From Penicillus capitatus (Eukaryota; Plantae; Chlorophyta): a DNA stretch of 64,000 nt. The DNA is taken from NCBI GenBank assembly GCA_965649825.1, contig OZ287711.1, forward strand, positions 231,201 to 295,200, read 5' to 3'. Position numbers and translations under genes: made by a program. Numbering within the stretch: the stretch's first letter is position 1; every line of letters starts with the position of its first letter. The notes under the pieces are model-generated. The model was not told the origin of the DNA. It worked only from the letters and a program-made list of their open reading frames with translations, and searched no databases. Shown one piece after another: positions 20,828 through 59,701 of this stretch.

Positions 20828-20868
20828 AGACCACGGCGAACGAACACACTCTTTTGTGTCGTACAAGC

Positions 20869-22853: not shown

Positions 22854-23063
22854 ATCCTCAAATGGACTTTTCAGACTTCGCCGCGCTTCTCGACGGCGCA
22901 AGATCTCTTCAACGATACGACGGTTTCTCTTCCATACTGGATATGTACAAAACCTTGAATCCTCAAATGGACTTTTCAGACATCGCCGCGCTTCTCGGCG
23001 GCGGGAGATCTCTTCAACGATACGACGGTGTCCCTTCCATGCTGGATTTCTACAAAACCTTCA
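22854..23063 (+). repeat. 105-bp (35-codon) tandem duplication spanning the deletion junction of paralogue A
   Basis: ATCCTCAAATGGACTTTTCAGAC...TACAAAACCTT occurs at 22854 and 22959, with ATGs at 22862 and 22967. Confidence 0.92.
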
Positions 23064-27995: not shown

Positions 27996-29108
27996 ATGTC
28001 TGTTCAGTCGGACTCTCCGAACCTCCCCGCGCTTCTGGTCGTTGGAAGGACGCGCGTGGGAAAAGGCCAATTTATTTCCACGGCTAACCAGATCCTCCAC
28101 GAATGCTCGCTTCCGGACATTGTTTCACATCGCAAAGTTTCGCACACCAGGACAACACGGGGATATCCTATGAGCCTTGATGGCCGCGACATCAGAATGG
28201 TGGACACTGTCGGCTTTGACGACAGTAGCGGAACGGACATTCCCGAAACAGCGTTGCTCCGTTTTTTGGAAAACACGGGAAAGGCTGACTTCTATCCACC
28301 ACTAGTGATACTTCAAACGCTGTCGGCACTCGAGAAGAATCTGTTGATGAAGATGGCAGCCGTCTTCCCAGAAGTCGTCGTGGCTTTTCGTGTAGGAGAC
28401 GAATCCGAAATCGAAGAGGCCCAGAATGACATTTATGCAGAGTGCCAAGTGACATCAATCAGGGTTTTCCCCATACAGACGTTCGTGCGTGACACCATTG
28501 ACGGAGGGCGCAGTCGGCAGTTGTATGACAGTAATGTCTCGGCTATACTGGATTTCTACAAGACCTTGACGCCTTCCAGGCAGATGCTGGATTTCTCAAA
28601 CCAGCTGTTTGCTGGACAGTATGAGAAGACGCCGTGTCCCAAAGAAACGAAAACTGAAGTTGTTGAGCTCAGCCACATAGAAACGCACCAAGAAACAAGG
28701 ACAGTTCCAGTTCCTAAAATCAAAGTCGTCAGCAATACATTGGATAGATACTATTACACCAACATCTTTGCGGTGTTCGCTGATGTCACACGTGAAGCCA
28801 AGGGAGAAATTACAGAGAGAATTCACCCAAGGGGGCCCCTTGCTGGTTTGTTTCACTTTTCGCGTGAGGTGTTTGGGAAATCCGAAGGCAATAGGCCGAC
28901 AAAGGAAGTGACTGTGTTTATCGACGAACAAAGAGACTTCGACGTTCCATTCACCATTACAGAGAAATTCCGCAGGACATCTCAGAGGGAAGTCGAAGAA
29001 GTGTGGAAGATACTCGCTGGAGAGATAAAGATTTATAAGGGATATGAATACGGGCCATGGGAGATCGTGAATGAAGACATTCTGCATCGCTCTGTTGACA
29101 GAGCCTGA
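27996..29108 (+). CDS. Hairpin-GTPase family paralogue B (370 aa, intact, intronless)
   Basis: LLVVGRTRVGKG (G1-like), VSHT (G2), MVDTVGFDDS (G3) and the conserved C-terminal KFRRTSQREVEEVWKILAG..GYEYGPW. Confidence 0.85.
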   Translation: MSVQSDSPNLPALLVVGRTRVGKGQFISTANQILHECSLPDIVSHRKVSHTRTTRGYPMSLDGRDIRMVDTVGFDDSSGTDIPETALLRFLENTGKADFYPPLVILQTLSALEKNLLMKMAAVFPEVVVAFRVGDESEIEEAQNDIYAECQVTSIRVFPIQTFVRDTIDGGRSRQLYDSNVSAILDFYKTLTPSRQMLDFSNQLFAGQYEKTPCPKETKTEVVELSHIETHQETRTVPVPKIKVVSNTLDRYYYTNIFAVFADVTREAKGEITERIHPRGPLAGLFHFSREVFGKSEGNRPTKEVTVFIDEQRDFDVPFTITEKFRRTSQREVEEVWKILAGEIKIYKGYEYGPWEIVNEDILHRSVDRA

Positions 29109-30898
29109 TCTGTCGTGTATTCGATGAGCATCTCTACTGACGATGAATGTTTGTGTTTGCCTTATCTTTCAGAATAACGCAAAGGTGAAAGCACTGCCGC
29201 TCTTGTGCTGCTTGTCCAAGAGAGCGTGTCCTGTTAGCGACGCGTGTTTTGCTGCCAAGAAGATGTCGATGGTCGTCTTAGATGTCTTCCCTAAGTGTAT
29301 GTACATAGCAAGAGGCGTGTGACTAAGGAGAGGAAGACTGTTTAGCTGTCTGCGGGATTCAGCGCAGCGAACCCTTTGCATTAGTCTGTTTCTTGTTTTC
29401 TGGATGTTAACACGGTTCAATCGCAGCAAATGTAAACGCTATTTGGGGATAAAGAAAAGAGTCAGAGCAGGCGCGTCGTTTACGAAAGAGAGATCCATTA
29501 GAGACACGCAATTACATGTACACAGACAGGCCTCAAGAAGTCGTTCAATCTCACTTAGAGTCAGTCGAGGATCCGAGGTGACGGCCATAACATTTGCCGT
29601 GTTGCGAAGCCATCCTGGACCGAGAAGCAAAAAGAGGAGAATGAGCGCGAGCCGCAAATACGTGTGACCTGGCAGAAAGGTAGAGATGAACATTTCGGAT
29701 GTCTTCTGAACAATACTTGTTGTTTGTCGTCTCAGACGTTTCGATCTCTGCATCCACTAGGTCTAGAAAGCGCGTGTCTTGCACAGCATTTATGAGCAAC
29801 CGAGTCGCACACACTTAATCATTTGGCCTTCCTTCGCCATCGTTGTCGTCCACGGTCTGCTGTGAATCCATCAAGAGGCCAAAGTGAGTTTACAGAAAGA
29901 GAAAGGCATCGACAAGGCGGAAAAAGACATCTTCCTGTGACGAGACATGTGAGGTAAACCGTTTCAGGCAGACGCTTGGTAACGCCGTAGCTTTCGTTTA
30001 GCGATGCTGGAGGAACTTTGGTCCTCTGTTGCGTCTCTTTCAGGAGTCTTTGGTCTCTCTACAACGTTAAAATCAACACTCGGCGAATCGTGGAGACGTG
30101 AAATGAAGCTTATCGGCTGCGAGACAAAGTCGACGGATGTCAACAGAAAAGAAGCATTGCTGTGGCAGTTTCATGGAAAAGCGTCTGTTTGGGGAGCAAT
30201 GACTTACATACGCGAACATGCTCAGCGCAGGACAGGTGTTACGAAAGATAGATAGATCCATCCGTTCTGTAACAGCTAGCCTTACAAACGCGTGTCGCTC
30301 TCGACTGGCATCAAGACGCTGCGAGATGATGGTAACTATATGAAATCAGATGAAATCTCTTGTAAAGGGTGTACACTGTCCTATGCATAGACGCGCTTAC
30401 CAAATTAGGCAAACTGTAGTTTCCCGATTCCTTACATCCGATGTCAATTTGTAACAAGTTTAAGCAATACGCAAACGTCCCAAGTTGAAAACCTCCTGTA
30501 CTTCTCTCAAAGAAAAGCCTTGCGGCGTTCTCATACAGTGTCCTTCCTTCCTCCCTTCCTCCGACTTGGTTTCGAGATCATGTTCTCGATAATAGCTGAG
30601 ATCTCGAAGAAGGTAGATGGGATTTCAGCTCGCCCTTCACAGTCGATCTCCGTCTAAAGAGATCCATCTGACTAAGATCTATGGTGAGTGATATTGTCTG
30701 GCGGAGTATATGCCAGACGAGCGTCGCGCGATCGAACAGGATCTGTTCAGCCGCGCGGCGCTCGTCTGGCGCATAGAACGCCCGACAAAAATTAGGCTAT
30801 CCCGTCGAGAACCGAGACCGGTCCTCGAGGGAAGCAAGTTGAAGAGAAGTGAAGAAAAATTTGAGAGGCGGTGGCCACCACCATGGAAGATAGGCCGT

Positions 30899-31013
30899 AG
30901 CCCGCCCGTCACCGTCCGCGTGTCTCTCCTCGCAGGCCGAAGCCCGCCCGTCACCGTCCGCGAGTCGTCCTCGCAGGCCGAAGCCCGCCCGTCACCGTCC
31001 GCGTGTCTCTCTG
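30899..31013. repeat. GC-rich direct repeat, 2.7 x 41-42 bp
   Basis: AGCCCGCCCGTCACCGTCCGCG occurs at 30899, 30941 and 30982. Confidence 0.9.
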
Positions 31014-33202: not shown

Positions 33203-36200
33203 ATGTTTTCCAAAGAGATCCAAGATGGGCCCAGCGACGGTACGGCGGGTGGCCATCAAAACGGCAGCGGCCCCGAAGTGCGACCCGCAGGACAAAGCGA
33301 CAATGTTTCAGACGAGAAGAAACTGAGGGCTCTCGTTAGAGAGAAGAGCATCGACTCAACGGCATCTCTGGTCCGAGCTTATAACGGCTCGGCGACTGGA
33401 GAGACGGAACATCTCCTTCACAAATTTCTTTTCATCTACTGTGCGAAGAAAGAGCAGTACATCAATCCTAACACCGTCATAGAGTATGCGGAGCTCTGTA
33501 AGATAAAGCCAAGGACGGACGACGACAGAGAGCTGCTCCACGAGGTGGTCTTGGCTCTCACTGGTCGGATTCCCGTTGGAGAATTTGCCGCCGAAAGCGT
33601 CGCGGAGGCGCTGTACAGGTCGTTGCTCTGGACACCTCCTGCCATTATCCAAGAAGACCTGACAGGACTCACAGCATTGGCGGACAAGCTCACGGCCAGT
33701 CTACATCCGACGCCGCGGCTGACGGAGGCTAATTTTCCTTCCCATGAGGCCACATTCGAGGCACTGCACGAAGTCTTCGTCCTCATGCAGAGGACAGCGA
33801 ATAAGAGAGTGACGGTGGAGCAGAAGAAGAGGTTCCAGTCGAGCCTCAGGGCGAAGCGTTCGTCGATGGGCGACTCATGCAAGCACTATCCCGTCCAGTA
33901 CTACTTCAGACTCATCGAACAGAGCATCCAGCGACTAGAGCTCGATGAAGAGCCTTCTCCGATTCTCAAGGCCATCCATTGCTTGTACATCATCACCTGC
34001 GGGTTCCTGCACATCTCCCACGCAGTGAAGCAAATACTAAAACTCGATATCGATCCCTCCCAGCTGAAAGCGCTGCCTGGCAATCTGAAAGAATTGGTTG
34101 CCGACATAGACGTTGCCGAGCGTCAATGGTACGATCTGCTTCAGGCTCTCAGCGTTGCGGGCAAGAAGACCGTCGAAGATCACCAGAAGCTTGAGATCTT
34201 CGAAGAGAGCTACAAGACCGTGGAAGCGACTGTCTGGAAGATGCGACGTAACGAAGACGGCAAAGCGCTGCTCTTTGGGCTCATGCAGGAGCTCCGTCAC
34301 CTCTCGTTAGCTCAAGGCTCTGCCGAGGTTAGCGCGTCAGGATCATCGAAGCTCTTTGCTCTGGCGGAGGCCGTTTCCAATAGCGTTTGGGTCAAAGACA
34401 AAGACATTGTGGAAGCGTTGCTCCGCTGTCTTCACGCCGTCCGTTCCAGAGGCAACGATGCTGAGGCAGCGCTGAGATTCTCGCAGCGACTGATTGACTC
34501 CGTCAAGTCGAATGCAGTCAGTAAAGCCGTGCGAGAATGGACGGGCGATAAGTCGCTCGAAGAGAAGCTCAGGGAAGCAGTGCATTCGCCACCAGAGCCG
34601 ACTGGGCAGCTCTTCCACGCAATGAGTCGAGAGATCGATCTCGTTCCGTTGGAAGAGGCACACAGCAACATCGAACGTCTCAGAATCCTGTACCAAAGCA
34701 AAAGATTTGCGACGGTAAGACTGCTCTCATTGTTCCTGATCGTTGAGAGTGTGTATGTCGAAGATGCCTTCTCTGTTCGACGAAGACGTGTGCGTGCACG
34801 TAAACTCCATGGAGCGTCACATCGTTATCTGCCAGACTGTCGAGGAAAACGATAGTATCGTGTCTGAGCAAACAGACTCCCAGCAAAGAGAAGATGGCTG
34901 TGCATCTGGACGCATTGCCAAGATGCCGATCGCGTTGGAGGACCTTTTCAAAGCGAGATCTCCGAAGAAGAATGCTCCTTTGCAAAGGATCCGTCGGATC
35001 TTGTTTCACGGGAAGCCAGGCTCGGGGAAGACGTGCGTCGGCAAAGCAGTCGCATACATGTGGGCGACAGGTCAGGCCTGGCCCGAGGTCGGCGCCGTTT
35101 ACGTCCTGTCCGCAAGAGAGCTCAATGACCCAGGACTCAACAGTGACGAAGACAAATCGCTCGTCGTGTCGATCGTCAAGCATTGCTTCACCGTCGAGCG
35201 TGTATCCGACAGAGGACTGTGCGCTCAAGTGGACGACCAGCTGGACCTCGACACGACGTTGCTCGTCATCGACGGTTTGGATGAAGCAAACGAGAGGGCC
35301 AATGAGATATTGGCGTCGGCGAGGCGTAGGCGATGCAGAGTCCTGTGGCTCACGCGTCCATACAATCTCCGGTCGATGCGTGAACTCGCAGACATCGAAG
35401 TGGAGTGCCTGGGATTCAGTGACAAACAAGTCGAGACGTATGTGGAGAAAGAGGTGCCGTTGGACAGCGGACGAAAGCTATTCGACGTCCTGAAGTCCAA
35501 TGCCTCGCTGTGGGAAGTGGCCCACATCCCAGTGATGGCCCACATCCTCAGCTTCCTGTGGAAAGAGGGAGTTGTGAACTTCGGCGGAGGCCGTCGATTG
35601 TGTCCCGCTTCGATGTACGCCGACATGGTCAACTACATTTGGCGTCGTTTCTTGAAGAAGGCGGGAGAGGAGAAGGCCACGCGCAAAGAGGTCTTTGCAA
35701 CGCTGGAAGCAATTGCATTCGACGCTCTACGCGAAGACCGCATCCTCATCAGCATGAGCTTCGTGGAGCGTCGCGAGGACTCGTTGAATGTCAAGGCGGT
35801 GCTGAGGCACAGTGGATTCCTGCTGTTCAAGGCAGAAGGTCTAGACTACCAGTTTCCGCATCTGACCTTCCAGGAATACTTTGCAGCGAGGTGGCTCGCG
35901 CACAGCCTGAATAAGTCGACCGAATCAGACGAACACCAGAAGGCGCTGGAGTTCTTGCGAGAGGAGAAGTATTTGGATAGACACAGGACAACGCTGATGT
36001 TCCTGGCCCAGCAGCTGGCGGTACAGCAGGGAGTCGCCGGATTGCCAGAACTGCTGTCAAGCCTCGACGAGGAACCGATTGAAGTAATCGGTCTGCAACA
36101 TCTGTTCCTGAAACTTCGCGTCGCGGAATCCTGGCTGACGGCGCTGGACGATTCGAACATAGAAGAGTTCTGTCACTGCGACGCCGTTGTTCAACTCATT

Positions 36201-38135
36201 GACGTCTCGATATCCGTACCTAGACTTCCAGACAAAATAGTGGTGCGCCGTGAGTTCGGTGATCTTTTTCGACACATGATTCTGCAATGCCCCACTTTGT
36301 TCGCCACTGTTCCCAAGATTCTCGATCATCTGACAGAGAAAACGATGGTCAGATACACAGTGCAATACGGTGTGTTTGGAGAAGTTGTTGGAGCCGCGAA
36401 ACATTCCCCCGGACACTTGAAGATATTGGTCGAAGAAGCCCGGCGTAACATACTGAGCGCTGTTAAGCTGGATCGCTATATTGGAATGGACATGCTGCGA
36501 GAACTACTAGACTGTGCACCTCAGCTGTCTGCAGATCTTTTGTCGCTGTGCGAGATGGTGCTTCTGAACAAGATTTTCAGTGGTCCGGGAACGTCATTGC
36601 AAGCCGTGATCAGTGTCCTGACAGATACGAAGAATATTCCGTCCGGGCTGTTGTCTCTGCTTGAAAGAACGAGCGCAAATCCGAATAAGTCTGCCAGGAA
36701 GGCTGTCATGGAAGCGATCGGGAGCTTTGCGTCTGCAGCCTCCGAACAATACAGTCGTATTCTGTCGCTCATAAAGAGAGCTTGCGAGGACGAAGATGTG
36801 GATGTCTGCCAGGAGGCACTGAGAGCCATCAGGCATTTCGTTTCAGAACAGGAATTCCTACTTGCTGACCTCATTCCGGTGGTAGAGCGCCTTACCCGTG
36901 ATGAAAACGAAGAGGTTCGTCGAGAAGCAATCAAGACGATCGAGTGCATGGGCAGAAAATCGCCACAGGTCTGGCCTCTGCTTCCAGCTCTGTGCCACTC
37001 GATGTGCTCGGCCGAGAAAGCAAGTGTGCGACGAGATGCGGTTGAGATGGCTGGACGTCTGGCAGCGTACGTACCGCCACTCCGAGGCGATCTAGTACCC
37101 TTGATAGAGGCAGGCTGCGCGGACGAGTGCGCTGTCGTCCGGGCAGCAGGAATGTGGGCAATCAAGCTCCTTGCCACCAGATCATCGGAGAATACGAACC
37201 ACCTGTTACGCACAGCTGCAGCGGGGTATGTGGATGAGAACGCGTCCGTTCGCCGGGCAGCGATGGAAGCCATCAGTCGTCTCGCTTTGGCTTCGCACCT
37301 TTCAGAAGATATCATGTCGCTGGTCAAGAGAGGGTCCCTGGATGAGGATGTCCATGTGCGTCTGTGGGCGGTTGATGCACTCGGCCGACTCTCTTCCGCT
37401 GCGCCTCACCTTTCAGAAGACATCCTCGTGTTGCTGCGCCAGAGTTGCTCCGATGAAAACGTCCAAGTGAGGCAGTGGTCGATGGAAGCCATCGGGAATC
37501 TGGCTTCAGCGGTACCAGACCTCGCTGTCGACATCTTGCCGTTGTTGAGAGTCGGTTGCTCGGACGGCGAGGAGCACGTGCGCTTGTGGGCCTTAAAGGC
37601 AATCAGCCGATTGGCAGCAGCTGCGCCACAGCTTTCAGAGAGTCTTTTGCCGCCGCTGAGAAACGTCAACGCAGGCGAAGACGCACACATGATGAAGAGA
37701 GCGGACGAAGCGATGAGGGCCATTTCATCAGCGACGTCTCTACGTCTCTTTCCCCGTCTTCTCGGCGCATCCGAAACCGAACGTGCGACAGACAGATCGA
37801 TGGGATCAGGAGCAGGGGCCAGTAACAAAACCGCGTTGGCGTTCGAAGATGTTCTGAGGGAGGCTATTGAGACAATGCGGCCGACCAAGTCACATCAATT
37901 TGCGTCTTGGTTTCTGTACGAAGCTGTCACCGTGGAGAAGACGAAGAAAAGCGGATACGGTAAAGTCGTTCTGCATTCGACCGATAAAAGAGTCGTTGGC
38001 GAGTATCCTATGGAGCACCTGAAGCAATTCCTGTCTGCTGTCGCCGAGATTCTCGACACATTTTATGATGGACTGCCGATTTCATTACGTAAAATCACGA
38101 CGAAGAAGTGCGAGAAGGACAGACTGGTCCAATAA
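33203..38135 (+). CDS. NLR-like STAND protein: N-terminal helical domain + NACHT NTPase + about 10 HEAT repeats (about 1627 aa, 2 exons)
   Basis: An intron at 34715-34763 joins ORF 33203 to ORF 34743 in frame. Walker A GKPGSGKT, Walker B LLVIDGLDE, LWLTRP, HIPVM and FPHLTFQEYFAA are present, then 39-aa D/E..VR..A..A repeats at about 36680-37720. Confidence 0.88.
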
Positions 38136-39405: not shown

Positions 39406-41231
39406 ATGGAGCATCGACCTGGCTTCTCGCAGTCTCCCGTGTTCCTCGTCGTTGGGAGAACGCGCGTCGGAAAAGGCGAGTTCATCTCCACCGCCCACAG
39501 AATCCTCAAAGGAAGCGCGCTTCCGAACATCGTATCCAGCCGTCTGGTTTCGCACACGAAAGAGACAAAGGGATATCCCGTGAGTCTCGGCGAACGCGAC
39601 GCTCGAATGGTGGACACTGTCGGCTTCGACAACAGCAGCGGAACGGACATTCCCGAAGAGACGCTGCTGCGTTTTCTCGAAGAGACTGGAAAGGCAGACT
39701 TCTATCCGCCGCTCGTCATACTCCAAACGCTGTCCGCAATGGAGAAGGATCTGCTGACGAAGATGTCTGCTGTCTTCTCGCATATCGTCGTGGCAGTTCG
39801 AATGGCTGGTGCATCCGCACTGGACGAAACGCGACGCGACATCGCTATTGAGTGTCGGATAGAGCCGGTCAGCGCCTTCCACCCGCTAGGGTTTGTGTCC
39901 GCGAAGCTCGACGGTGGGACTAGTCGTCGGCTGTATGACGCTGGCGTCCAGGATATACTGGATTTCTACGGCGGTCTGACCCCTTCCCGGAGGGCACTAG
40001 ACTTCTCGAGCTCGCTGTTCGCTGGAGACTGTGTGAGAACGCCGTGCTCGCCAGAGACAAAATGCGCCGCCGTTTCGCACCAGCGCCACGAAACACGACG
40101 AGAGAGAAGGACGATAAGGGTTCCCGTGATAGTGACCCTCGCAGACAGTGGCCACTACGAAGAAGCAAATCCCTCCGTGGCCAAGGCCTTCAACTGGGGA
40201 TCCGGCGCTTGCTCGGGGATAGGGATGCAGGCCGCCATTACTGCTGTTGCCGCTGTCGTTCTCGTGGTCCTAGGCGCGGAGGGCAGTCGTTCTCCGAAGA
40301 CTCGTGGCTAATTTCTTCCGCGCTAGGTTCCGTGTACGACGGCCCCGCTTCAGCGACTTCCTCGTGCTGGATTTCCTGGACCGCGGTACTCCTGTCGTCC
40401 GAGCTGCGTCGGGAGTTAAAAAGAGCGGTGTTGTGGACCACTCGCTCTGCGCCCCACTGGAAGAGTTCCGAGGCTTCGATGCTCCTACGCTCGGCGCTCC
40501 TGAAGTGTTCAAGGGCGGCAAGGAACGGCGGATTGCGGTAGAGCGGAGGATAAGGAACAGTTGCTCGCGCGATGTGTCGTGCTTCGTCGTCGGCCAGAGT
40601 GAACACTCGAACGCGAAACGAAAACGAAAACGTTTACAATGAGCAGACGAACAGCGTTTCCCAGCCTTTTATCCGGTCGAGGCGACGCGACTTCCTAGAC
40701 AGGTGAGTCATCCAGCGCCGAGAGCCAGAAAAAAGGGCCCCTTCGCGGCACGGGGTCTCATCTGACACGACCCCAAGTGTCCCTTGAACGCATGACCCCA
40801 TCTCCAACAAGGCAGTCCCATCATCAGGTCCCTTCCTGCATTTGCATCATCATTCCTCTATTTCATCTCGTCGACAGCCGCTTCGGCGTCTGCTGCTGCG
40901 TTTGTCGGTCCTGTGTTGTGGGTGTGTGCCGGAATCGCCTGTCAGTACGCGTCGATTAAGGCGGGTGAAGACGTCTGGGTTAGCGACACGAGGCAAGAGA
41001 TCGCGTTACCTCGATGAGAAGAAGGAAGTCGACGTGAGATACGTCGTCACACAGAAGCTCCGCAGGACGTTTGTCCGAGAGGTTCAAGAAGTGTGGAAGA
41101 TACTTGCTGGCGAGATCAAGATCTTCGAGGGATACGAGTACGGTCCGTGGAAGGAAGCAGGCGACGAGCGTCTGGACAGGTTCGAAACGGAACTGCCATC
41201 AGATCTGCCCGAGGGAAAACGTGTTGACTGA
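39406..41231 (+). pseudogene. Hairpin-GTPase family paralogue C, disrupted by an approximately 0.6-kb insertion and a frameshift
   Basis: An intact G domain (GRTRVGKG, DTVGFDNS) runs to about 40260, then foreign sequence with a stop at 40311. The tip resumes near 40875 (AASASAAAFVGPVLWV...), there is a +1 shift near 41008, and the conserved C-terminus ends at 41231. Confidence 0.82.
40262..40870 (-). other. Inserted segment inside GTPase C carrying an unrelated inverted ORF fragment
   Basis: No counterpart in paralogues A, B or D; a minus-strand frame reads LADDEARHIARATVPYPPLYRNPPFLAALEHF. Boundaries are approximate. Confidence 0.55.
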
Positions 41232-52476: not shown

Positions 52477-52631
52477 GGAGAGGGCTTTGTCGGCGTTGCA
52501 GAACACGAATCGCCTAACACGGTGCGCTGTTTATCGCTAATCGACGCATGATGGTTCACAGGAAATGTCGAGCATGTCTTTTCAAACGGTGTTTCGCACT
52601 CTACTGTGTATCAAACATGTTCTGCACAACT

Positions 52632-54297
52632 TTAGGGGCGGGGGAACGTTGGCTCAATCACATCTGCAGACGTTAACTCCTTAATGCGCCGGAGACTCGG
52701 GAAGGTCTTCATCAGTGCCGCCTCTTGAGCAGGAAACAGACAAGTCTCCGGACGAAACCACAGTTCTCTGAGATTTTTCATGCTTCCCTGTAGCTTTCTT
52801 CGATCCAACTCGAATGGCATGGAGGACCACAACTTGAGTTCTCTGACATTCGAAAGTGCTGTCAAGCCAAAGTAGAACCCAGGCAACTCGAAAGGTAATT
52901 TCCATGCCTCGAAATGCAGCTTCGTCAGATCCGGCAAGGTTCCCACAGCATCGAAGAAATCGTACTCCACGTCAACCATTATCACCGTCAGCGTCTTCAG
53001 CTTCCTCAATTGCGCAAGCGTGGATGAACGCAGTGCAGGTGAGTGCGTGTCAGATGATCTTAATTCTGGGTCAGTGTTGACGATTTTGAGTGATTCCAGG
53101 TTTGGCATGCTGGCCAAGAAGTAGGGGAAATCTGGGGGCAGGTCGTAATCGGGTTGGATGTGGAGATCGACCAGCGACGTCAAGCAACGCAGAGATCTCC
53201 CAGAGATGTTGCGCCCCGACAGAACAAGACGCGTCAACTGCGTCATGGCGGTCAGCGATTCCGTCATCTTCAGCGGAAACGGTGACTCCGACGTCTCTCT
53301 GAGAACGAGCGCCTGGAGATGGACCAGCGAGAACACCGATTCCATAAAGGCATCGACGCTTTCGCACTTGACGCCTGCCGCGAAGAACTCCGTCAGATGA
53401 TGCATATCGCTCAGAACGGCGGCGAAATTGCTGTGCTTTTCGTCGACGTCGACAACGGCCAGTTTTTCCAGGCGAGAGAAGGAACGCAGGATGGACCAGT
53501 CTTTGAGTTGGGGATGCTGTCCGAACACGCCGAGATGCAGAGATCGTAGAGAAGAGGCATAGGGTGCCATCACCTGCAACACACATCGACGCCATCGGGT
53601 CGTTGCCTTTTAGCCGTACCTGCAGTTTAGGAATGGGGTATTGCAAGTGCGGCAGTCGCCATCTGCTCGTGATCTCGAGGCGTGTCAGTTGAGTGAGAGA
53701 CGGGAAGCGCAACTCTTCACCGTGGCCGAAGAGAATGTTGGTATTTCCTATCAGCGTTTGCAGCCTTTGCAGTTCGGTGACGGGCATCGGATCGACATAC
53801 ACTGCCCTGCAAGACGTATAGATGGCCAGTGCCGTCAGGTTTTGCAGCTCCCTCAAGACATCCGTCATGGCATAGAAGGTTTCCTGAGCGTCGATTTTGA
53901 CGGAGAGCGACTGCAGACGTTCCACCGATCGAAGACTCGATACCAGGCTTTCCGGAATGTTGTAGGTTTGGTAGAACGCCAGTTTAAGGTGTTGGAGATG
54001 TCGAAGTTGGGGGAGGTAGGGGATCAGATGCGTCTCCAGGATGTCTGGTGTCGTGGCGTCATTTTGAAGGGGCAGAGAGGTGACGGCAGGGAATGCCTCG
54101 GTGATGCGTTGCATCTCGTTCATGTGCATTTGTTTAAGCTTGACAGGCAGTTTCCGAGAGGCTTCGTACCAACGACGACAGACCAGACGGCATTCGCGAA
54201 TGTCTTCGTCCAAAACGCACGTGAGGATCTTCAGCAGGAAGTACTCTTCTTCGAGCAGTGTGCTCAGGAGGCGGCCCTCGGGCAATGTAGACTCCAT
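52632..54297 (-). CDS. F-box-like/LRR protein 2 (539 aa)
   Basis: LLEEEYFLLKIL...IRECRLVCRRWYEAS.KLPVKL; an intron at 53619-53574 (46 nt) sits at the same position as in LRR1 and LRR3. Confidence 0.85.
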
Positions 54298-54599
54298 GTG
54301 ACTGACTATTCGGCGTTTATCGATGCCACGGGTGACGTCGCTCGTTTGAGAAACACAGGAGGTGATGGTCGAGAAAGCGAAGAGGAAAGCGTGAAAAAGG
54401 TAGCATGTGGCTCAAGACGGCTGCTGACCGTATGCATGCCGTATGCAAGATCGATCTGTCTGAGACGTGCGTGCGTGTCCATTTCTCAGTTTTTTTTTCG
54501 CCTTTCGCCTTGCCGTCGGAATTTTGCACCTGGCTCTGTCGACTGCACCGAGATGCCTCGCGTGAGCGTCGACTTCAGGTGCCGCTGGGAGACATCTGC

Positions 54600-54644
54600 C
54601 GACATGACGTCGTTGGACGATGCTTCCTGAGATTCGCGTTCCAT
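54600..54644 (-). pseudogene. Remnant of the RRP36 5' end (MERESQEASSNDVMS), co-duplicated with carA
   Basis: Near-identical to 20785-20827, then diverges. Confidence 0.7.
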
Positions 54645-54684
54645 AGACCACCGCGAACGAACACACTTTTCGTGTCGTACAAGC

Positions 54685-55478
54685 ATGAAGGCCATTCGAC
54701 CCGGTGTCCACTCCATCCAGCCTTCAGCCAGAGCGTCGCCGCTTGTTCGTCGGAGACGTCTGCGTCTCGTTGCCGCGTCGACGACACCGTAGAAGAAGAA
54801 CGCGCGACTGGTGTTGGAAGATGGCACCGTCTGGCCTGGCGTCGGATTCGGCGCCAAAGGCACACACGTGGCCGAAGTGGTGTTCAATACGTCGATGACC
54901 GGATATCAAGAGATCATGACGGATCCGAGCTACAAAGGACAGTTCGTGTGCTTCACGCATCCACACATCGGCAACGTCGGCGTCAACACAGGTCACTCCT
55001 TCAAATTGTGGGTCAGTCAGTGTATGCACGGGTCATGTATTGGCAGATGACGTCGAGTCAAGAGCCTGCCACCTGCGTGGGATCGTTGTTCAGGATCTCT
55101 CTCACGCATTGTCTCGAACTACCGTGCCGAGACGTCGCTGACGCAGTACTGTGAGGAGAACGATGTGGTGGGCATAGCGGAACTCGGCACGCGTGCCTTG
55201 ACGAAACGCATCCGGGAAAGAGGCGCGCTCGTCGGTGAGCACATCCCGTGATGTGACGGCTGCCAAATGGGATCACCCGACCGATCGACCCTCACACACG
55301 CCTTTACACGTCTGGCATACTTTCTCACTTGGATGGGCGCGTTTTAAAGACGTGCGTTACCTTTTTAGGTGGTGACTTTCGACATTGGTATTAAGTGCAA
55401 TATCTTGCGTCGTTTGGCATCGCCAGGGCCACACGCTTCCGATCAGGCTTTTGCCGAAGCTGACGAACCGAAGGCGGT
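54685..55478 (+). pseudogene. carA: carA pseudogene
   Basis: Collinear with 20869-22384. It has an in-frame TAG at 54790 (TGG in the original), a 2-nt insertion near 55100, an approximately 210-bp deletion near 55245 and an approximately 477-bp deletion at 55416-55423. Confidence 0.95.
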
Positions 55479-55704
55479 AAAAGCCAAGGTGTAAAAACGC
55501 CAGCATCTCGTGTTATACATAGCTCACTTCTGCGAGAGATCGACAGGAGCTGAGGCACAGAAAGGCATCCCTTTAAACAACGGATAAGAACTGCGCACGG
55601 ACATGCCCGTAGCGCATTGATTGAATCTCTACCCCCACTTAAATACAGAAGCAATATCGTTGGGCTTGCATGAAGGCACCGACACATCCTGGATAGGAAG
55701 ATGC

Positions 55705-57511
55705 CTATGGATCCGTTGTCAACTTGCATTCCCCATCGAAGAGCTCGATAGCTGAGGTCGTCAGATGGATGTGCTTGTGTGGATATGCACGGAAAGGAAA
55801 GCGCACGAGACAGATGTGTCGAAGGCACGGAAAGGCACGGATCAGAGCCGAATGGCTGACGGTTTCCTCCAATGATGTCGCAATCTGTCGATACCACTTC
55901 TTGCGGTCGAATTCCGTCGTCACGAAGAGCATCTTCTGCAGCCTCGGCAAGCATCCTCCCATCAATCGTATTCGATCTTCCGTCAGTGCCCAGCGACACG
56001 ATACGGTCAGCACTGCTAAACGGGACAACAGCGTCAGCTGAGCGAAGAAAACATGATCGCCTTCGTCAAGGAGGCCCGGAAGAAAACTCAACTCCGTCAA
56101 ACCTGGCAGCGCCGCCAGCGCAGTGAAAAAACTGGACGCTATCGGATCGACCTTCCACAACTGCAATGTCTTGAGTTTGGTCAACGGCCGAACAACTTCC
56201 GGCGGCAATGCGAAGGGTTCGCCGCACTTATTGATCTTGAGCGATGTCAGATGCGGCATACAGGACAGTGCTTGCGGCAAGAATGTCGGCATGGGGCTGT
56301 GGCCGACGATTTCGAGTTCGATTAACTTCGTCAGGCACGAGAAGGAGCTTCCACATAACGATCGTTCCACGACGAGGCGCGTCAACTGCGTCATCGCCGT
56401 GAACGCTTCGGTCGAGTCACATGCGACCCGCAGATGTCGATTCTGAGCGGGCTCGAGGAGGAGTGAGCGGAGTTGCGTGAAGCTCGGCACGAAACTCACC
56501 GGTACAGGAGCATAATCATTCGTCATACAGGAGATTTCCAGTTCCGTCAAGTGATGCATCTCCTGGACAGCGGCATAGAAACCCTCGAGTGGCACTTCCT
56601 TGTATACAAGTTTAAGCGACTCCAGACTCGAAAACCGTGTCAGCGATGGTATGTCTGCGATCAAAGCGCTGTCCCAGAAGTCATGAATCTCTAGCGACTT
56701 CAGCAGCGCGGCATAAGGCAAGAGAGTCTGCACAGCATAACATCCTTCGAGAAGTGACATGTATTGTCATCACTTTCAGCTGCAGAGCTCTCTCTGCCCT
56801 ATAAGGCAATCTAACGCAGTAAACACGGAGCTGTGTGAGCCGAGTCAACGTCGGCAAGAGCAGGCGATGGTCCGGAGTGAGCAATACATGAGCATCAGCG
56901 ACGAGCTTCACAAGTCCTTGCAACTGTGTGACGGGCTCGAAGGGATCGAGTCGTTTTCGAGGCGCACGGAGACCTAGGGACGTGAGCTGCGTCAGGTATG
57001 GCAAGAGCTCGATCCACGCAGGGTAGTCGCTTTTCTCTTTGATGCGGAAGGAAAGGGATCGAAGGCTCGTCATCGAGAGGAGTATGGGTTGGAGTTTCTC
57101 CGCGACTGGACGTCCTCCGCATAATCGTGTCTCTAAAGTGTGCAGTTTTGTGAATCGTGCCAGCCACGGAATCGCATCGGCATCCAAGGCATCGTACCTG
57201 TCCCGCCAGTCTTGGAAACAGAGAGCCGTGGCGTCTGGAAACGCCGTGGCTGCTTTTTTGACCACTTTGCGGGCGTCGAAAGCGAGTCCTGTTCGAATCC
57301 TGACGGGTAGCTTCTGGCAAGCTTCGCGCCATTGGCGACAGACGAGGCGGCACTCTTGGAGACCGTCTGCCATGGCGCAGGTCAGCACTTTGAGCAGGAA
57401 ATACTCGTGTTCGAGAAGAGCGCCGAGAATGCTCGCTGCTGTCGGCGCGGGCCCAGACTCGGACGCGGCATCAGCGAGGTGTCGCTGGTTCGCTGGAGAC
57501 GACGATGACAT
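55705..57511 (-). CDS. F-box-like/LRR protein 3 (586 aa)
   Basis: LLEHEYFLLKVL...GLQECRLVCRQWREACQKLPV; an intron at 56773-56728 (46 nt) joins ORFs 56681 and 55705 in frame. Confidence 0.85.
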
Positions 57512-58417
57512 TGTTCCTCACTTATGGCGAATAAACGTTTACGATTGTCGCGACGAAGAGACAGTAGGAATTCCGAGACCTGCTGCAAACGCATCGACGT
57601 CGATGCACGATTCCGAATCACAACGTCGCCGAAATCGACGTTTGTATCATGTGCGCATCTAGCGGCGACGGTAGATAAGCGGTCTCCCCTCGACTAGCTT
57701 GCAAAACCTCAAATCCCAGAGAGACGTCCGCGTCGCCTCGCCGAGTCGCGCGAGGAAACGCATGGCGGAAAACCAGACGAACGCTATAGAATCGACAACG
57801 GGTTTACTGCGGGTGGCGGCGGAGTTACTGCGATGATGTGACCCAGAACACCATGGCAGTGAGCGACTCCGCCGCCACCCGCGACAAACCTGTTGTCTGA
57901 CCTCTCGCGAAGTCGATCTCGCAAAATTGCCCGAGGTCCCAGACGCTTAAAACAAAACATGTTCGACCAGCCGACCGACCTGGAAGCAAGCCGGCACTTG
58001 TCACCAAGACCTGTCACATCTCTCTGTTCGTCCGTGCGATGTTGAGCTTCTGCTGCCGGCGCAGACACCGACCACTCCTCCTGAGTCGGATAACGAATAC
58101 ACCCGAGTAAGGCAGTCAGTGTGCCGTTTCGAAGGGAACAGTACGGACGGCGCTGTCTTGTGGAGAGGCGACGGGATTCTCTCGTTGCGCAAACGCACCG
58201 GTTCAGATGAAATGGTTGACACGTGTCAAGGTTTCAGAACCGTCTTTGCGGTTTTCTCCAAAACTTCGTCTTTTCCACACGTACAAAGTCGCGTTAAACA
58301 GAGTGCCGAACTGTTCTTCGTCAGCCCTTGTTCGGTATTTCCGACTTTCCCGTTTCGTTTTTTGCGTGGTTGGGTACACACCGTCGTTATTCGTTGCCAC
58401 CTTCGCGTCTGCGTCCA

Positions 58418-59701
58418 ATGAATTCTCAAGCGAACTCTTCAGACCGCGCCGTGCTTCTTACCGTTGGGAGGACGCGCGTTGGGAAGGGCGAATTCATTTC
58501 CACAGCCAACCGCCTCCTCCACGGCCGCGGACTTCCACACATTGTTTCGCGTCGCAAAGTCTCGCACACCAAGAAGACACATGGATATCCCATGCGCCTT
58601 GCCGACGAAGACATCCGAATGGTCGACACCGTCGGCTTCGACGACAGCAGCGGAACGGACATCCCCGAGACAACGCTGCTCCGTTTTCTCGCGGACACGG
58701 GGAAAGCCGACTTCTATCCGCCGCTCGTCATACTGCAGACGCTGTCTGCGCTGGAGAAGGACGTGCTGAAGAAGACGAGCGCCGTTTTCTCGGAAGTCGT
58801 CGTAGCCCTTCGAGTGGAAGACGCATCCGAGATCGAAGAGGCCCAGAATGACATCGCTAACGAGTGCCGAGTGACACCGATCAGAGTCTTCCCCATACAG
58901 ACGTTCGTGCGCGACGCCCTCGACGGCGGGCGCAGTCGGCAGCTGTATGACAGTGACGTCTCGGCCATCCTGGATTTCTACAGAACCTTGACGGCTTCGA
59001 GAAAGAAGCTGGACTTCTCGAGTGAACTCTTTAAAGGAGAATTCGAAAGAAGGCCGTCGCGCCCAGAGACGAAAAGCGAAGTCGTCAAGGTGCGCAGCAA
59101 CGAAAAACGCCTTGAGAGAAAGACGATCGAAGTCCCCAAGAAGAAGACGCTTGTCAACGGTGGGCATTTCGAAAGAACAGCTGATTGCACCAAAGTCAAA
59201 CGTCTGACTGCGGGGGCTGACGTGTGTCACGCGGGAGCAGCGGGGTGCGGCGTCGGCGGCGCAGCATTGAGTGCGACTATTGCCGCCATGCCTGAGGTCG
59301 CTGCGATGTCAGCTATGGTACCTCCAGTCGCCATCGCCCTGCTTGGAGCATCGGCTGGGCTGTTCATCGCTGGAGCCTGCTTGAAAGACGAAGCCGATTT
59401 TTGCGAACAGGGGCGAAAGTGGGTCGTAGATAAAAAGGAGGAGATCGTGTACGTGACCAAGAACGAAGTGGTCAACGTGAAGTACATCATCACACAGAAG
59501 TTTCGCAGGACGTCGGAGAGAGAGGTTCACGAAGTCTGGAAAGTGCTTGCTGGCGAGATCGAGATCTTCGTGGAGTATGCGTACGGTCCGTGGAAGGTGC
59601 TCAGCGATGAGCTGCTGGATCACTTCGAAACGGAAATGCCCGCATACCTGCCGGAAGACAAGTTGCCAAAGGGTCTGTCCAAAGGAGAACGTGTCCATTG
59701 A
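58418..59701 (+). CDS. Hairpin-GTPase family paralogue D (427 aa, intact, intronless)
   Basis: GRTRVGKG, VSHT and DTVGFDDS, a Gly/Ala-rich hydrophobic tip, and the conserved C-terminal KFRRTSEREVHEVWKVLAG..EYAYGPW. Confidence 0.87.
   Translation: MNSQANSSDRAVLLTVGRTRVGKGEFISTANRLLHGRGLPHIVSRRKVSHTKKTHGYPMRLADEDIRMVDTVGFDDSSGTDIPETTLLRFLADTGKADFYPPLVILQTLSALEKDVLKKTSAVFSEVVVALRVEDASEIEEAQNDIANECRVTPIRVFPIQTFVRDALDGGRSRQLYDSDVSAILDFYRTLTASRKKLDFSSELFKGEFERRPSRPETKSEVVKVRSNEKRLERKTIEVPKKKTLVNGGHFERTADCTKVKRLTAGADVCHAGAAGCGVGGAALSATIAAMPEVAAMSAMVPPVAIALLGASAGLFIAGACLKDEADFCEQGRKWVVDKKEEIVYVTKNEVVNVKYIITQKFRRTSEREVHEVWKVLAGEIEIFVEYAYGPWKVLSDELLDHFETEMPAYLPEDKLPKGLSKGERVH

What the first reader, a model, noticed from the sequence alone, without database searches (positions are those of the whole stretch)
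27996..59701. Unrecognised GTPase-fold family: G domain + putative long beta-hairpin stalk + hypervariable hydrophobic tip
Seen: paralogues share a near-identical G domain and two T/E/V/K/R-rich segments with strand-like alternation (outbound ETK.E.V..S..E..E.RT..V; inbound V.V....T.K.RRT..RE..EVWK.LAG....F.GYEYGPW). Between them the sequence is essentially unalignable. In D it is GAAGCGVGGAALSATIAAMPEVAAMSAMVPPVAIALLGASAGLFIAGACL, in A SGIGKAAMWMGNDPLVAGTLMAAG, in C GACSGIGMQAAITAVAAVV...AAAFVGPVLWVCAGIA, and in B an amphipathic YYYTNIFAVFA...GPLAGLFHF. Known: GIMAP/AIG1, IRG, GBP and dynamin-like GTPases act on membranes in immunity through hydrophobic paddles. Inference: a membrane-inserting or pore-forming immune effector with a swappable tip. 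I do not recognise this architecture.
Basis: partly seen in the sequence, partly recalled or inferred. Interest (0 to 1): 0.8.

Follow-up and report, generated by a model that had tools for sequence, protein, structure and literature searches.

The report
Algal GIMAP-like protein with beta-ribbon stalk
A small, uncharacterised gene family of green algae and diatoms joins a GIMAP/AIG1-like nucleotide-binding domain to a long two-stranded beta ribbon of fixed length that carries a variable, mostly greasy tip; it sits in fast-evolving clusters next to NACHT-type genes, so it looks like a new membrane-targeting module of an algal conflict or immune system.

Summary
The window holds four paralogues: A 22862-23584 (no G domain, outside the stated range), B 27996-29108, C 39406-41231 (interrupted here) and D 58418-59701.

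AlphaFold2 predicts a G domain, then two roughly 40-residue strands, confident in B (pLDDT 92-98). An unmodelled tip lies between them. Foldseek matches only the G domain, best to GIMAP7/2/5 and Toc34. Nothing in Pfam, the PDB or BFVD matches the C-terminal half.

An exhaustive HMM search of 1.84 billion representatives finds 47 proteins. Named ones come from Caulerpa and the diatom Seminavis. The arms are 41 and 38-39 residues in nearly all members, while the tip is 11-87 residues.

- G domains are 64-78% identical, not near-identical.
- Tips are conserved within subtypes.
- The P-loop reads GKG rather than GK[S/T], so GTPase chemistry is doubtful.
- Both arm faces are polar, which argues against a beta-barrel pore.

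The context looks conflict-like. The module of family gene, 5xx-aa gene and NACHT-HEAT gene recurs at three old paralogous loci. The B alleles differ by dS 0.39 inside 98-100% identical flanks.

Membrane anchoring or insertion is plausible. Pore formation is untested.

The parts
27996..29108 (+). Copy B: intact 370-aa gene with an amphipathic, aromatic tip type
   Evidence: ORF. AF2 gives mean pLDDT 83.7 and pTM 0.71. The allele on the ENA contig is only 78% aa identical.
28044..28067 (+). B P-loop GRTRVGKG, with Gly where the Walker A Ser/Thr is expected
   Evidence: Read directly from the sequence. GKG is conserved across the family, including distant members; only P0015 has GKS.
28614..28733 (+). 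B outbound arm (aa 207-246), one continuous strand
   Evidence: AF2 DSSP strand E207-246, pLDDT 92-98. This arm is 41 residues in nearly all family members.
28734..28898 (+). B tip (about aa 247-301): two aromatic/hydrophobic patches around a charged helix
   Evidence: AF2 pLDDT is below 50 for aa 249-299. Hydropathy: KD19 0.18, KD11 1.25, eight aromatic residues.
28899..29105 (+). B inbound arm (aa 302-340) and two C-terminal strands (EVWKILAGEIKIYKGYEYGPWE...)
   Evidence: AF2 strands E302-340, E344-352 and E356-369, pLDDT 93-98. This is the most conserved non-G segment.
58418..59701 (+). Copy D: intact 427-aa gene. G domain aa 1-206; outbound arm aa 207-253 (59036-59176); tip aa 254-332 (59177-59413); inbound arm aa 333-377 (59414-59548)
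   Evidence: ORF. P0001 is 99.8% identical. AF2. The tip has KD19 2.24 and 40% Gly/Ala/Ser, arranged as helix, VPPV, helix.
39406..40254 (+). Copy C, 5' part: G domain, outbound arm and first half of the tip
   Evidence: 96.5% aa identity to the intact ENA allele P0004 over aa 1-283.
40255..40882 (+). 628-nt insertion in the C tip, absent from the ENA haplotype. It starts with GT and ends with AG followed by a repeated CCGCT.
   Evidence: blastn and sequence reads. No other copy of it in the window or in the eight loci fetched by then, L001-L008.
40883..41231 (+). Copy C, 3' part: second half of the tip, inbound arm and C terminus, with a 1-nt insertion near 41005 relative to the intact allele
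22862..23584 (+). Copy A: G-domain-less copy with a duplicated last G-domain helix, both arms, a 44-aa tip and the C terminus
   Evidence: tblastn covers only aa 198-431 of D. ORF. The ENA counterpart is P0148. Internal 103-nt tandem duplication.
33203..38135 (+). Linked gene pair: a 550-aa protein of unknown function plus a 1130-aa NACHT-HEAT protein, about 4 kb downstream of B and 1.3 kb upstream of C
   Evidence: Pfam NACHT 1.6e-14 and HEAT repeats. The same module follows family genes P0013 and P0002 at two other loci, with NACHT proteins 48-75% identical between modules.
24849..26582 (-). Leucine-rich-repeat gene pair upstream of B. It also diverges between haplotypes (85-93% nt identity in places).
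   Evidence: Gene calls with LRR_14 on L003. Sliding identity.
52632..57511 (-). Two F-box/LRR gene pairs upstream of D (52632-54297 and 55705-57511)
   Evidence: Pfam F-box-like and LRR_14, both below Pfam's curated cut-offs. Similar pairs flank family genes on other contigs.

Best explanation
This is a lineage-restricted eukaryotic family found in an unidentified alga of likely green lineage, with distant members in the ulvophyte Caulerpa and the diatom Seminavis. Its N-terminal 200 residues form a divergent AIG1/GIMAP/Toc34-type G domain. The Walker A motif reads GKG instead of GK[S/T], so nucleotide chemistry is probably atypical or lost.

The C-terminal half leaves the G domain as a 41-residue strand and returns as a 38-39-residue strand. 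Together they form a rigid, polar two-stranded beta ribbon whose base joins two further strands. I infer a length of roughly 10 nm from strand length, not from coordinates.

The far end of the ribbon is an insertion site that accepts 11-87 residues. In most copies of this species the insert is a Gly/Ala/Ser-rich pair of hydrophobic helices split by Pro-Pro, which is hydrophobic enough to be a membrane hairpin. In B-type and distant members it is a short basic-plus-aromatic or hydrophobic loop, of the kind that binds at a membrane interface.

Proposed mechanism (inferred): the tip anchors or inserts into a membrane, and the tip type chooses which membrane or how. The ribbon holds the G domains at a fixed distance above that membrane. 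The G domains then oligomerise as GIMAPs and septins do.

The genes evolve by birth and death in clusters tied to NACHT-HEAT and F-box/LRR genes. The family is therefore most likely the membrane-acting arm of a conflict or immune-type system, not a housekeeping GTPase.

Shown: family, fold class, arm geometry, tip variability and genomic linkage. Inferred: membrane binding, oligomerisation and immune role.
For: Family and range:
- An exhaustive profile search finds only 47 proteins at E<=1e-3 among 1.84e9 representatives.
- Named members are Seminavis robusta CAB9527989.1 and a Caulerpa lentillifera EukProt model.

G domain:
- Foldseek's best hits are GIMAP7 3zjc (E 1.3e-7), GIMAP2, GIMAP5 and Toc34.
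- The nearest out-of-family sequences carry Pfam MMR_HSR1, AIG1 and Septin domains, with the motifs GxTGVGKS and DTPGFDD[ST].

Ribbon:
- AF2 predicts E207-246 and E302-340 at pLDDT 92-98 from a 34-sequence alignment. A similar topology appears in D.
- Arm lengths are 41 and 38-39 residues in 25 of 30 full-length members, down to about 20% identity. P0017 is shortened on both arms, to 24 and 27 residues.
- Cross-strand opposite-charge excess peaks at p+q=42, the register expected for a hairpin that closes at the tip, out of 41 registers scanned.

Tip:
- KD19 is 1.7-2.2 in most copies of the window's species clade, with 33-46% Gly/Ala/Ser and a central PP.
- Distant members have a basic stretch followed by a PLLGVGSW-like loop.

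Functional constraint:
- dN/dS is 0.29 for the B alleles and 0.25 for the C G domain.

Conflict-type context:
- The family gene, 5xx-aa gene and NACHT-HEAT module occurs at three loci. The NACHT proteins are 48-75% identical and the family genes about 46-59%.
- The B gene is a sharply bounded island of 82-86% nt identity (dS 0.39) within flanks that are 98-100% identical.
- C is intact in one haplotype and broken in the other.
- A is truncated.
Against: - There is no experimental or expression evidence for this species.
- The tip itself is unmodelled (pLDDT below 50), so its helical-hairpin nature rests on hydropathy alone.
- B-type, A-type and most distant members lack a segment hydrophobic enough to span a membrane. 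P0150, P0155 and P0166 have tips of only 11-18 residues, so membrane insertion cannot be the conserved core function.
- The GKG P-loop and a degenerate G4 leave it open whether any nucleotide is bound.
- Linkage to NACHT could simply be inherited from block duplication. The two loci from a more distant genome (P0016, P0017) have no NACHT neighbour.
- dN/dS shows no positive selection anywhere, including the tip.
- AF2 with 17-34 sequences can over-predict long hairpins, and coordinates could not be inspected.
Confidence: 0.45

Rival explanations
1. Pore-forming executioner. On activation, perhaps by the linked NACHT-HEAT protein, the hydrophobic helical hairpin at the tip inserts and oligomers permeabilise a membrane. 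This would resemble the hydrophobic helical hairpins of colicin and Bcl-2 type pore formers.
For: - The tips are Gly/Ala-rich helix-PP-helix units with KD19 up to 2.24.
- G domains of this class oligomerise, which is established knowledge for GIMAPs and septins.
- Linkage to NACHT genes recurs.
- Allele and copy turnover is typical of effector genes.
Against: - Neither model resembles any pore-forming fold.
- The arms carry a Thr ladder on one face and an E/K/R ladder on the other, so they cannot line or span a bilayer.
- Several members have no hydrophobic tip.
- Nothing suggests a masked or autoinhibited state.
- A constitutively exposed pair of transmembrane-grade helices more simply predicts a resident membrane anchor.
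Confidence: 0.12
2. Housekeeping organelle GTPase or pseudo-GTPase. The protein would be a resident hairpin-anchored membrane protein that tethers or scaffolds an organelle membrane such as ER, lipid droplet or plastid envelope. This would resemble atlastin, mitofusin, Toc34 or transmembrane-anchored GIMAPs, with no role in conflict.
For: - The out-and-back stalk with a membrane element at the far end mirrors the topology of the dynamin superfamily and mitofusin (AF2).
- The fixed arm length suggests a spacer or ruler.
- Selection is purifying.
- The G domain is also close to Toc34.
Against: - The taxonomic range is extremely narrow and patchy, at 47 proteins in 1.84e9.
- There are many divergent paralogues per genome, with truncated and broken copies.
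- The B alleles show dS 0.39 inside identical flanks.
- The tip classes are radically different from one another.

None of this is expected of a core organelle factor.
Confidence: 0.2
3. Soluble recognition module. The ribbon would display a variable loop that binds a ligand or partner protein. The Gly/Ala-rich stretches would be flexible low-complexity linkers, not membrane segments.
For: - The tip is the only region with large length and sequence variation between subtypes.
- AF2 gives it no structure.
- B-type tips are charged and amphipathic.
Against: - 19-residue windows with Kyte-Doolittle values of 1.7-2.2 occur in most copies of this clade. That is unusual for soluble loops.
- A conserved central PP and flanking Cys and basic residues fit a membrane hairpin.
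- Tips are conserved within subtypes, not diversifying.
Confidence: 0.1
4. Decaying or selfish ORFs, meaning pseudogenes or cargo of a mobile element, with no cellular function.
For: - A is truncated and C is broken in this window.
- A retrotransposon integrase lies nearby at 60385-61899.
- Segmental duplications surround A and D.
Against: - B and D are intact.
- dN/dS is 0.25-0.29.
- Architecture and arm lengths are conserved from a green alga to a diatom.
- Positions are syntenic in two haplotypes.
- NCBI names the Seminavis member 'expressed unknown protein'.
- There are no relatives in IMG/VR.
Confidence: 0.03

Closest known systems
GIMAP / AIG1 / IAN GTPases (Pfam PF04548), including transmembrane-anchored GIMAP1/2/5
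   Same: They are the best structural match for the G domain, with GIMAP7 3zjc at E 1.3e-7 and also GIMAP2 and GIMAP5. Both have the motif DTxGFDD[ST] after strand 3, and a hydrophobic box after switch II (FYPPLVILQTL) that recalls the GIMAP conserved box. That second resemblance is from memory and was not tested. Both are multi-copy and rapidly evolving, have immune associations in animals and plants, and include members with a hydrophobic membrane anchor.
   Different: The family falls below the Pfam AIG1 cut-off, at 16.7 bits against 27. Walker A is GKG, not GKS. No conserved G4 Asp is present. The helical C-terminal extension and tail anchor are replaced by an out-and-back beta ribbon with an internal tip.
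Toc34 / Toc159 chloroplast import GTPases
   Same: They belong to the same AIG1-like fold group, with Foldseek E-values of 2.5e-5 to 4.4e-5. They occur in plastid-bearing organisms and are membrane-anchored.
   Different: The family has no C-terminal tail anchor or beta-barrel M domain. It is lineage-restricted and multi-copy instead of universal in plastid-bearing lineages. Its genes cluster with NACHT and LRR genes.
Dynamin-superfamily membrane remodellers with an out-and-back stalk (BDLP, mitofusin/FZO, atlastin)
   Same: They share the topology of a G domain, a stalk going out, a membrane-binding paddle or transmembrane hairpin at the far end, and a stalk returning to the G domain. Atlastin-1 appears among the Foldseek hits (E 2.6e-5).
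   Different: The stalk here is a two-stranded beta ribbon, not helical bundles. The G domain is small (about 200 aa) and of GIMAP type, without dynamin insertions. No sequence relationship was detected.
Fungal and protist AIG1-like 'G domain' proteins with GxTGVGKS...DTPGFDD[ST] (the out-of-family hits P0170-P0179)
   Same: They are the nearest sequences outside the family (E 1e-8 to 1e-3) and share the first 80-100 residues motif by motif.
   Different: They keep a canonical GKS and have helical or coiled C-terminal regions. None has the ETK...GGHYE...WVKDKK...EVWKVLAG...EYGPW half.
Hydrophobic helical hairpins of alpha-pore-formers and of hairpin-anchored proteins (colicin/Bcl-2 type; oleosin/caveolin type)
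   Same: Both show two Ala/Gly-rich hydrophobic helices joined by a tight Pro-containing turn. This is a resemblance at sequence level only.
   Different: No fold or sequence match was found. The hairpin here is displayed on a beta ribbon, not packed inside a helical bundle. It is absent from B-type, A-type and distant members.

Membership tests
AIG1/GIMAP/IAN (PF04548) | Scores above the Pfam AIG1 gathering threshold | tested here: not met
   B scores 16.7 bits against a 27-bit cut-off. Only 4 of 34 members reach even E<=0.1. MMR_HSR1 matches 13 of 34, with a best E of 7.6e-6.
AIG1/GIMAP/IAN (PF04548) | G-domain fold closest to solved GIMAP structures | tested here: met
   The top Foldseek PDB hits for both models are GIMAP7, GIMAP2, GIMAP5 and Toc34, with about 205 aligned columns and E down to 1.3e-7.
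AIG1/GIMAP/IAN (PF04548) | Canonical G1 Walker A, GxxxxGK[ST] | tested here: not met
   The motif is G[KRP]TR[VIA]GKG[EQT] in all members that include the region, except P0015, which has GKS.
AIG1/GIMAP/IAN (PF04548) | G3 DxxG followed by a GIMAP-like FD[DT] motif | tested here: met
   VDTVGFDDS is almost invariant in the family. The out-of-family AIG1-like relatives have DTPGFDD[ST].
AIG1/GIMAP/IAN (PF04548) | G4 with a guanine-specifying Asp | tested here: inconclusive
   After strand 128-132 the sequence reads R-x-x-D in many copies of this clade. The Asp is missing in C, P0013, P0014 and the distant members, while R132 is nearly invariant.
AIG1/GIMAP/IAN (PF04548) | Helical C-terminal extension, with or without a C-terminal tail anchor | tested here: not met
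   AF2 predicts strands and an internal tip, not helices alpha6 and alpha7.
GTPase (functional sense) | Binds and hydrolyses GTP | not testable with these tools
   The sequence shows only an atypical G1 and a weak G4. Nucleotide-binding and hydrolysis assays are needed.
Dynamin superfamily / mitofusin / atlastin | Large dynamin-type G domain and helical-bundle stalk | tested here: not met
   The G domain is about 200 aa, and the stalk is predicted as beta. Atlastin appears only at Foldseek rank 14.
Dynamin superfamily / mitofusin / atlastin | Out-and-back stalk with the membrane-binding element at the distal end | tested here: met
   The order is G domain, strand, tip, strand, back to the base. 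The arm lengths are matched.
Beta-barrel pore-forming proteins (aerolysin, haemolysin, MACPF, gasdermin types) | Amphipathic hairpins with one lipid-facing hydrophobic face, and a recognisable pore-former fold | tested here: not met
   One arm face is Thr-rich and the other is E/K/R-rich. No such fold appears among the PDB or BFVD hits listed.
Toc34/Toc159 | C-terminal tail anchor or M-domain barrel, and conservation across plastid-bearing lineages | tested here: not met
   The architecture differs, and only 47 proteins were found in 1.84e9.
NLR-associated immune gene cluster (functional class) | Conserved physical linkage to STAND/NACHT genes together with elevated polymorphism | tested here: met
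   The module recurs at three paralogous loci. The B alleles show dS 0.39 against flanks that are 98-100% identical. Functional coupling itself was not tested.

The most novel reading that the evidence does not exclude
The family would be the membrane-attacking effector arm of an algal NLR-like system. A NACHT-HEAT sensor encoded about 4 kb away would activate a GIMAP-derived pseudo-GTPase. That protein's rigid 10-nm beta ribbon would drive a subtype-specific hydrophobic hairpin into a target membrane, either the cell's own (cell death) or a pathogen's or virus factory's. This would be an executioner architecture unrelated to gasdermin, MLKL, CC-resistosomes or HeLo domains, with tip classes maintained as old alleles by balancing selection.
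Probability: 0.12. Interest if true: 0.85.

Novelty: new variant of a known kind. Interest (0 to 1): 0.6.

Why it matters
Membrane-acting GTPases of cell-autonomous immunity (GIMAP/IAN, IRG, GBP and dynamin-like proteins) all use helical stalks or tail anchors. This family would add a different solution: a length-invariant two-stranded beta ribbon that acts as a spacer, with a swappable membrane element at its end. It is built on a GIMAP-like domain that has lost the canonical Walker A serine.

Its repeated linkage to NACHT-HEAT genes, and the very old alleles at one locus, make it a concrete and testable candidate for an effector of algal innate immunity or allorecognition. Almost no molecular parts are known for that process.

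It is also a clean case for studying single-layer beta ribbons, and for asking how a pseudo-GTPase scaffold is reused.

Tried and rejected
Searches that found nothing useful:
- PDB sequence searches with D alone and with the family profile gave only chance-level hits.
- Pfam found nothing for the C-terminal half, even at E<=1.
- Rfam found nothing in the window.
- Foldseek against the PDB and BFVD matched only the G domain. The EF-Tu 'full-length' hits have an rmsd of 25-30 Å and are meaningless.
- Pattern scans of IMG/VR and the JGI metagenomes found no relatives. Alignment A2 was too divergent for that tool.
- A word-indexed profile search added no new taxa.
- Literature searches found no description of the family or of the Seminavis gene.
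- The linked 550-aa protein has no Pfam or PDB match.
- The context of a distant member on a 7.7-kb Logan contig was uninformative.

Analyses that were negative or uninformative:
- Positive selection on the tip: sliding dN/dS between the B alleles is 0.11-0.58 everywhere and 0.26-0.30 in the tip. Paralogue comparisons are too saturated to use.
- A gene-conversion donor for the divergent B allele: no paralogue in about 210 kb of fetched sequence is closer than the allele itself.
- Fourier analysis of arm hydropathy gave no period-2 peak, because both faces are polar. Residue-class ladders and the charge-register scan were informative instead.

Ideas considered and rejected:
- I first took LVILQTLS to be the G4 site. 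Comparison with AIG1-like outgroups places it in the box after switch II, with G4 after strand 128-132.
- I considered reading the 628-nt insertion in C as a repeated transposon. No second copy was found.

Organism identity could only be narrowed. The carbamoyl-phosphate synthase small chain is 75% identical to its best named hit, Tetradesmus, and there is a family homologue in Caulerpa.

Full report
**What is in the window**

The window looks eukaryotic. It contains:
- a split, plastid-type carbamoyl-phosphate synthase small-chain gene, whose best named hit is Tetradesmus obliquus at 75% identity;
- a NACHT-HEAT protein, a Ser/Thr kinase, F-box/LRR genes, a Chlamydia-PMP-repeat protein and a retrotransposon integrase.

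tblastn with B and D finds four related stretches:
- A, 22862-23584. It has only the C-terminal half and lies outside the stated range.
- B, 27996-29108, intact, 370 aa.
- C, 39406-40254 plus 40883-41231.
- D, 58418-59701, intact, 427 aa.

**How large and how wide the family is**

- A word-indexed search of 5.8 billion protein clusters returned 17 relatives, all from ENA assemblies.
- An exhaustive HMMER profile search of 1.84 billion representatives returned only 47 proteins at E<=1e-3, and 30 at E<=1e-10.
- Full-length distant members at 20-34% identity come from metagenome or SRA assemblies.
- Two members have names: Seminavis robusta CAB9527989.1, a diatom protein called 'expressed unknown protein', and a Caulerpa lentillifera EukProt model.
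- No relatives were found in IMG/VR or in the JGI metagenome contigs by pattern scan.
- I found no paper describing the family.

**The G domain**

- Pfam gives only sub-threshold MMR_HSR1 and AIG1 matches, and only to the first 60-70 residues.
- Both AF2 models place GIMAP7, GIMAP2, GIMAP5 and Toc34 at the top of the Foldseek PDB list, over about 205 columns with E down to 1.3e-7.
- The BFVD hits are AIG1 or GBP domains from giant viruses.
- The weakest hits of the profile search, which lie outside the family, carry Pfam MMR_HSR1, AIG1 and Septin domains. They share the first about 100 residues motif by motif: GxTGVGKS.FI ... DTPGFDD[ST].

So the domain is a derived AIG1/GIMAP-like G fold. Two defining GTPase features are not met:
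- Walker A is G[KRP]TR[VIA]GKG[EQT], with Gly in place of the Mg-coordinating Ser/Thr, in every member that includes the region except one.
- The Asp of G4 is not conserved.

DTVG (G3) and a switch-I Thr are conserved. I therefore treat 'GTPase' as unproven, and a pseudo-GTPase as a serious possibility.

**The stalk**

AF2 on D with 17 sequences gave mean pLDDT 74.5. It predicts one continuous strand at 207-253, low-confidence helices and coil through the tip, and a strand at 333-377 followed by two shorter strands.

AF2 on B with 34 sequences gave mean pLDDT 83.7 and pTM 0.71. It predicts strands 207-246 and 302-340 at pLDDT 92-98, a tip at 249-299 with pLDDT below 50, and then strands 344-352 and 356-369.

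Two observations independent of AF2 agree with this model:
1. Arm lengths are almost invariant. The outbound arm is 41 residues and the inbound arm 38-39 in 25 of 30 full-length members, down to about 20% identity. The segment between them ranges from 11 to 87 residues. The one member with a clearly shortened outbound arm (24 residues) also has a shortened inbound arm (27).
2. I scanned 41 antiparallel registers for an excess of opposite-charge over same-charge pairs. The maximum fell at p+q=42, the register expected if the hairpin closes exactly at the tip boundaries. The effect is modest, and the chance of the maximum landing there is roughly 5%.

Column profiles show one arm face rich in Thr and the other in alternating E/K/R. 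Hydrophobic alternation appears only near the base, where the two extra strands pack. This is the signature of a solvent-exposed two-stranded ribbon. It also means the arms cannot form a transmembrane barrel. No PDB or BFVD structure listed matches the ribbon.

**The tip**

Between window paralogues the tip aligns at 5-22% identity. Within each subtype, compared across related loci on other contigs, it is 46-67% identical, similar to the outbound arm at 53-63%. The tips therefore fall into discrete, conserved classes and are not continuously hypervariable.

The classes are:
- C-type and D-type, and most other copies of the window's species clade. These run GGHYE, then about 10 residues, then G-S-G-A-C, a Gly/Ala/Ser-rich helix, (A)PPV, a second hydrophobic helix, Cys, a short polar stretch and WV.D.K. 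Kyte-Doolittle 19-residue maxima are 1.7-2.2.
- B-type. Two aromatic patches flank a charged helix (KD19 0.2-0.9).
- A-type. Shorter and moderately hydrophobic.
- Distant members. A basic stretch is followed by a hydrophobic or aromatic loop of about 10 residues (PLLGVGSW, LFLLGVGGW).
- Three members have only 11-18 residues.

The motifs GGHYE and WVKDKK on either side of the tip are conserved across the family.

The conserved core is thus the G domain plus the ribbon. The ribbon's end is an insertion site. In this lineage it has mostly acquired a unit hydrophobic enough to form a membrane helical hairpin.

**Evolution and context**

The window is collinear with an ENA metagenome contig (ERZ25074695, ctg340102, 236.7 kb), which behaves as another haplotype of the same species. 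Long stretches are 100% identical.

Against that background:
- The B gene is a sharply bounded island of 82-86% nt identity, running from about 27950 to 29400. It shows dS 0.39, dN 0.11 and dN/dS 0.29.
- The two B alleles are 78% identical in protein. That is as far apart as either is from the B-type gene on a different contig, at 74-76%.
- No closer paralogue that could have donated the sequence was found in about 210 kb.
- The LRR pair upstream of B, and the HEAT end of the NACHT gene, are also locally divergent.
- D is 99.8% identical between haplotypes.
- C is intact in the ENA haplotype (P0004, 398 aa). In the window it carries a 628-nt insertion and a 1-nt insertion.
- A lacks the G domain in both haplotypes.
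- A and D share a duplicated upstream block that includes a fragment of the carbamoyl-phosphate synthase gene.

The arrangement of a family gene, a 3-4 kb gap, a 5xx-aa gene of unknown function and an approximately 1,100-aa NACHT-HEAT gene occurs three times:
- after B in the window;
- after P0013 elsewhere on the same ENA contig;
- after P0002 on another contig.

Between these modules the NACHT proteins are 48-75% identical and the 5xx-aa proteins 64-71%. F-box/LRR pairs flank several copies. Two loci from a more distant genome (ERZ26696514) lack a NACHT neighbour.

The linkage is old and recurrent. It could still be inherited from block duplication without reflecting function.

**Interpretation**

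What is shown:
- a real and very narrowly distributed family;
- a GIMAP-like fold with an atypical P-loop;
- a length-invariant paired beta stalk, from prediction plus two independent sequence arguments;
- a variable distal insert that is strongly hydrophobic in most copies here;
- purifying selection;
- birth-and-death dynamics, one pair of very old alleles, and recurrent linkage to NACHT-HEAT and LRR genes.

What is inferred:
- The tip anchors or inserts into a membrane.
- The ribbon acts as a spacer of about 10 nm.
- The G domains oligomerise.
- The system serves conflict or immunity.

I put about 0.85 on the architecture, about 0.6-0.7 on membrane association for the C and D types, about 0.4-0.5 on a conflict or immune role, and about 0.1 on pore formation.

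**Comparison with known systems**

In topology the family resembles the out-and-back stalks of BDLP, mitofusin and dynamin, which carry a membrane element at the far end. The stalk here is built from beta ribbon, and the G domain is of GIMAP type.

It is not a member of Pfam AIG1 by score, P-loop or C-terminal architecture, although the G fold is clearly of that lineage. It fails the defining features of beta-pore formers. I rate it a new variant of a known kind: AIG1-like, membrane-associated, rapidly evolving GTPase-fold proteins. Its stalk has no described counterpart in the libraries available here. An AlphaFold Database fold search could not be run.

Noticed in passing
window 40255-41010 (copy C): The 628-nt insertion begins with GT and ends with AG followed by a repeated CCGCT. 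If a 623-nt GT...AG intron were spliced out, 5 nt would remain. Together with the 1-nt insertion near 41005, that restores the frame downstream. The product would be a full-length protein in which about 40 tip residues are read in another frame (PLRRLLLRLSVLCCGCV..., the open frame of ORF 40842-41231). This could be coincidence, pseudogene decay, or a new tip created by a compensated frameshift. There are no RNA data.
   Followed up: partly
window 27950-29400 compared with L003 9845-11347: The allelic island at B has 82-86% nt identity and dS 0.39, inside flanks that are 98-100% identical. The edges coincide with the gene plus about 300 nt of 3' flank. This suggests balancing selection, introgression or conversion from a donor not sampled here.
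   Followed up: partly
window 54595-55512 and 57994-58239 compared with 20778-22680: A partial, degenerate duplicate of the carbamoyl-phosphate synthase small-chain gene and of the 5' flank of A lies upstream of D (78-87% identity). An F-box/LRR gene pair (55705-57511) is inserted between the pieces. A and D therefore derive from one duplicated block.
   Followed up: partly
window 22854-23061 (copy A): A 103-nt tandem duplication (91% identity) repeats the last G-domain helix (…SLQRYDG.SS.LD.YKT…) at the start of the G-domain-less copy A. It is present in both haplotypes.
   Followed up: no
window 33203-38135: The 550-aa ORF and the NACHT-HEAT ORF overlap by about 110 nt in different frames, here and in paralogous modules. 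They may be one gene with a short intron or frameshift. The 550-aa part has no Pfam or PDB match. The HEAT end (36600-38700) is polymorphic between haplotypes, while the N-terminal part is identical.
   Followed up: partly
window 43432-48931 (- strand): A large gene or gene set encodes about 930 aa of Chlamydia-PMP-type repeats (GGVVYA...), a Cys-rich region and a multi-pass hydrophobic C-terminal part. The repeat block at 46800-48000 differs strongly between haplotypes (70-88% identity in the overlapping local blastn alignments of the repeats, with many gaps), probably from repeat turnover.
   Followed up: no
window 1222-4431: Two ORFs encode (SP)n and [10 protein letters not shown] repeats (tandem DNA repeats in steps of 30 nt at 1553-1947) and long poly-Gly runs. 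They resemble the hydroxyproline-rich and glycine-rich wall proteins of green algae (from memory, not tested).
   Followed up: no
window 60385-61899 (- strand): A retrotransposon-type integrase ORF (Integrase_H2C2 plus rve) lies just downstream of D.
   Followed up: no
P0145, P0150 (distant members); P0015: Two distant members, including the Seminavis gene model, begin with a hydrophobic stretch like a signal peptide ahead of the P-loop. In P0015 the N-terminal extension appears to be a translated 5' leader instead, because it shares GRLVDTFxFAS with the sequence upstream of A. Whether any member enters the secretory pathway is open.
   Followed up: no
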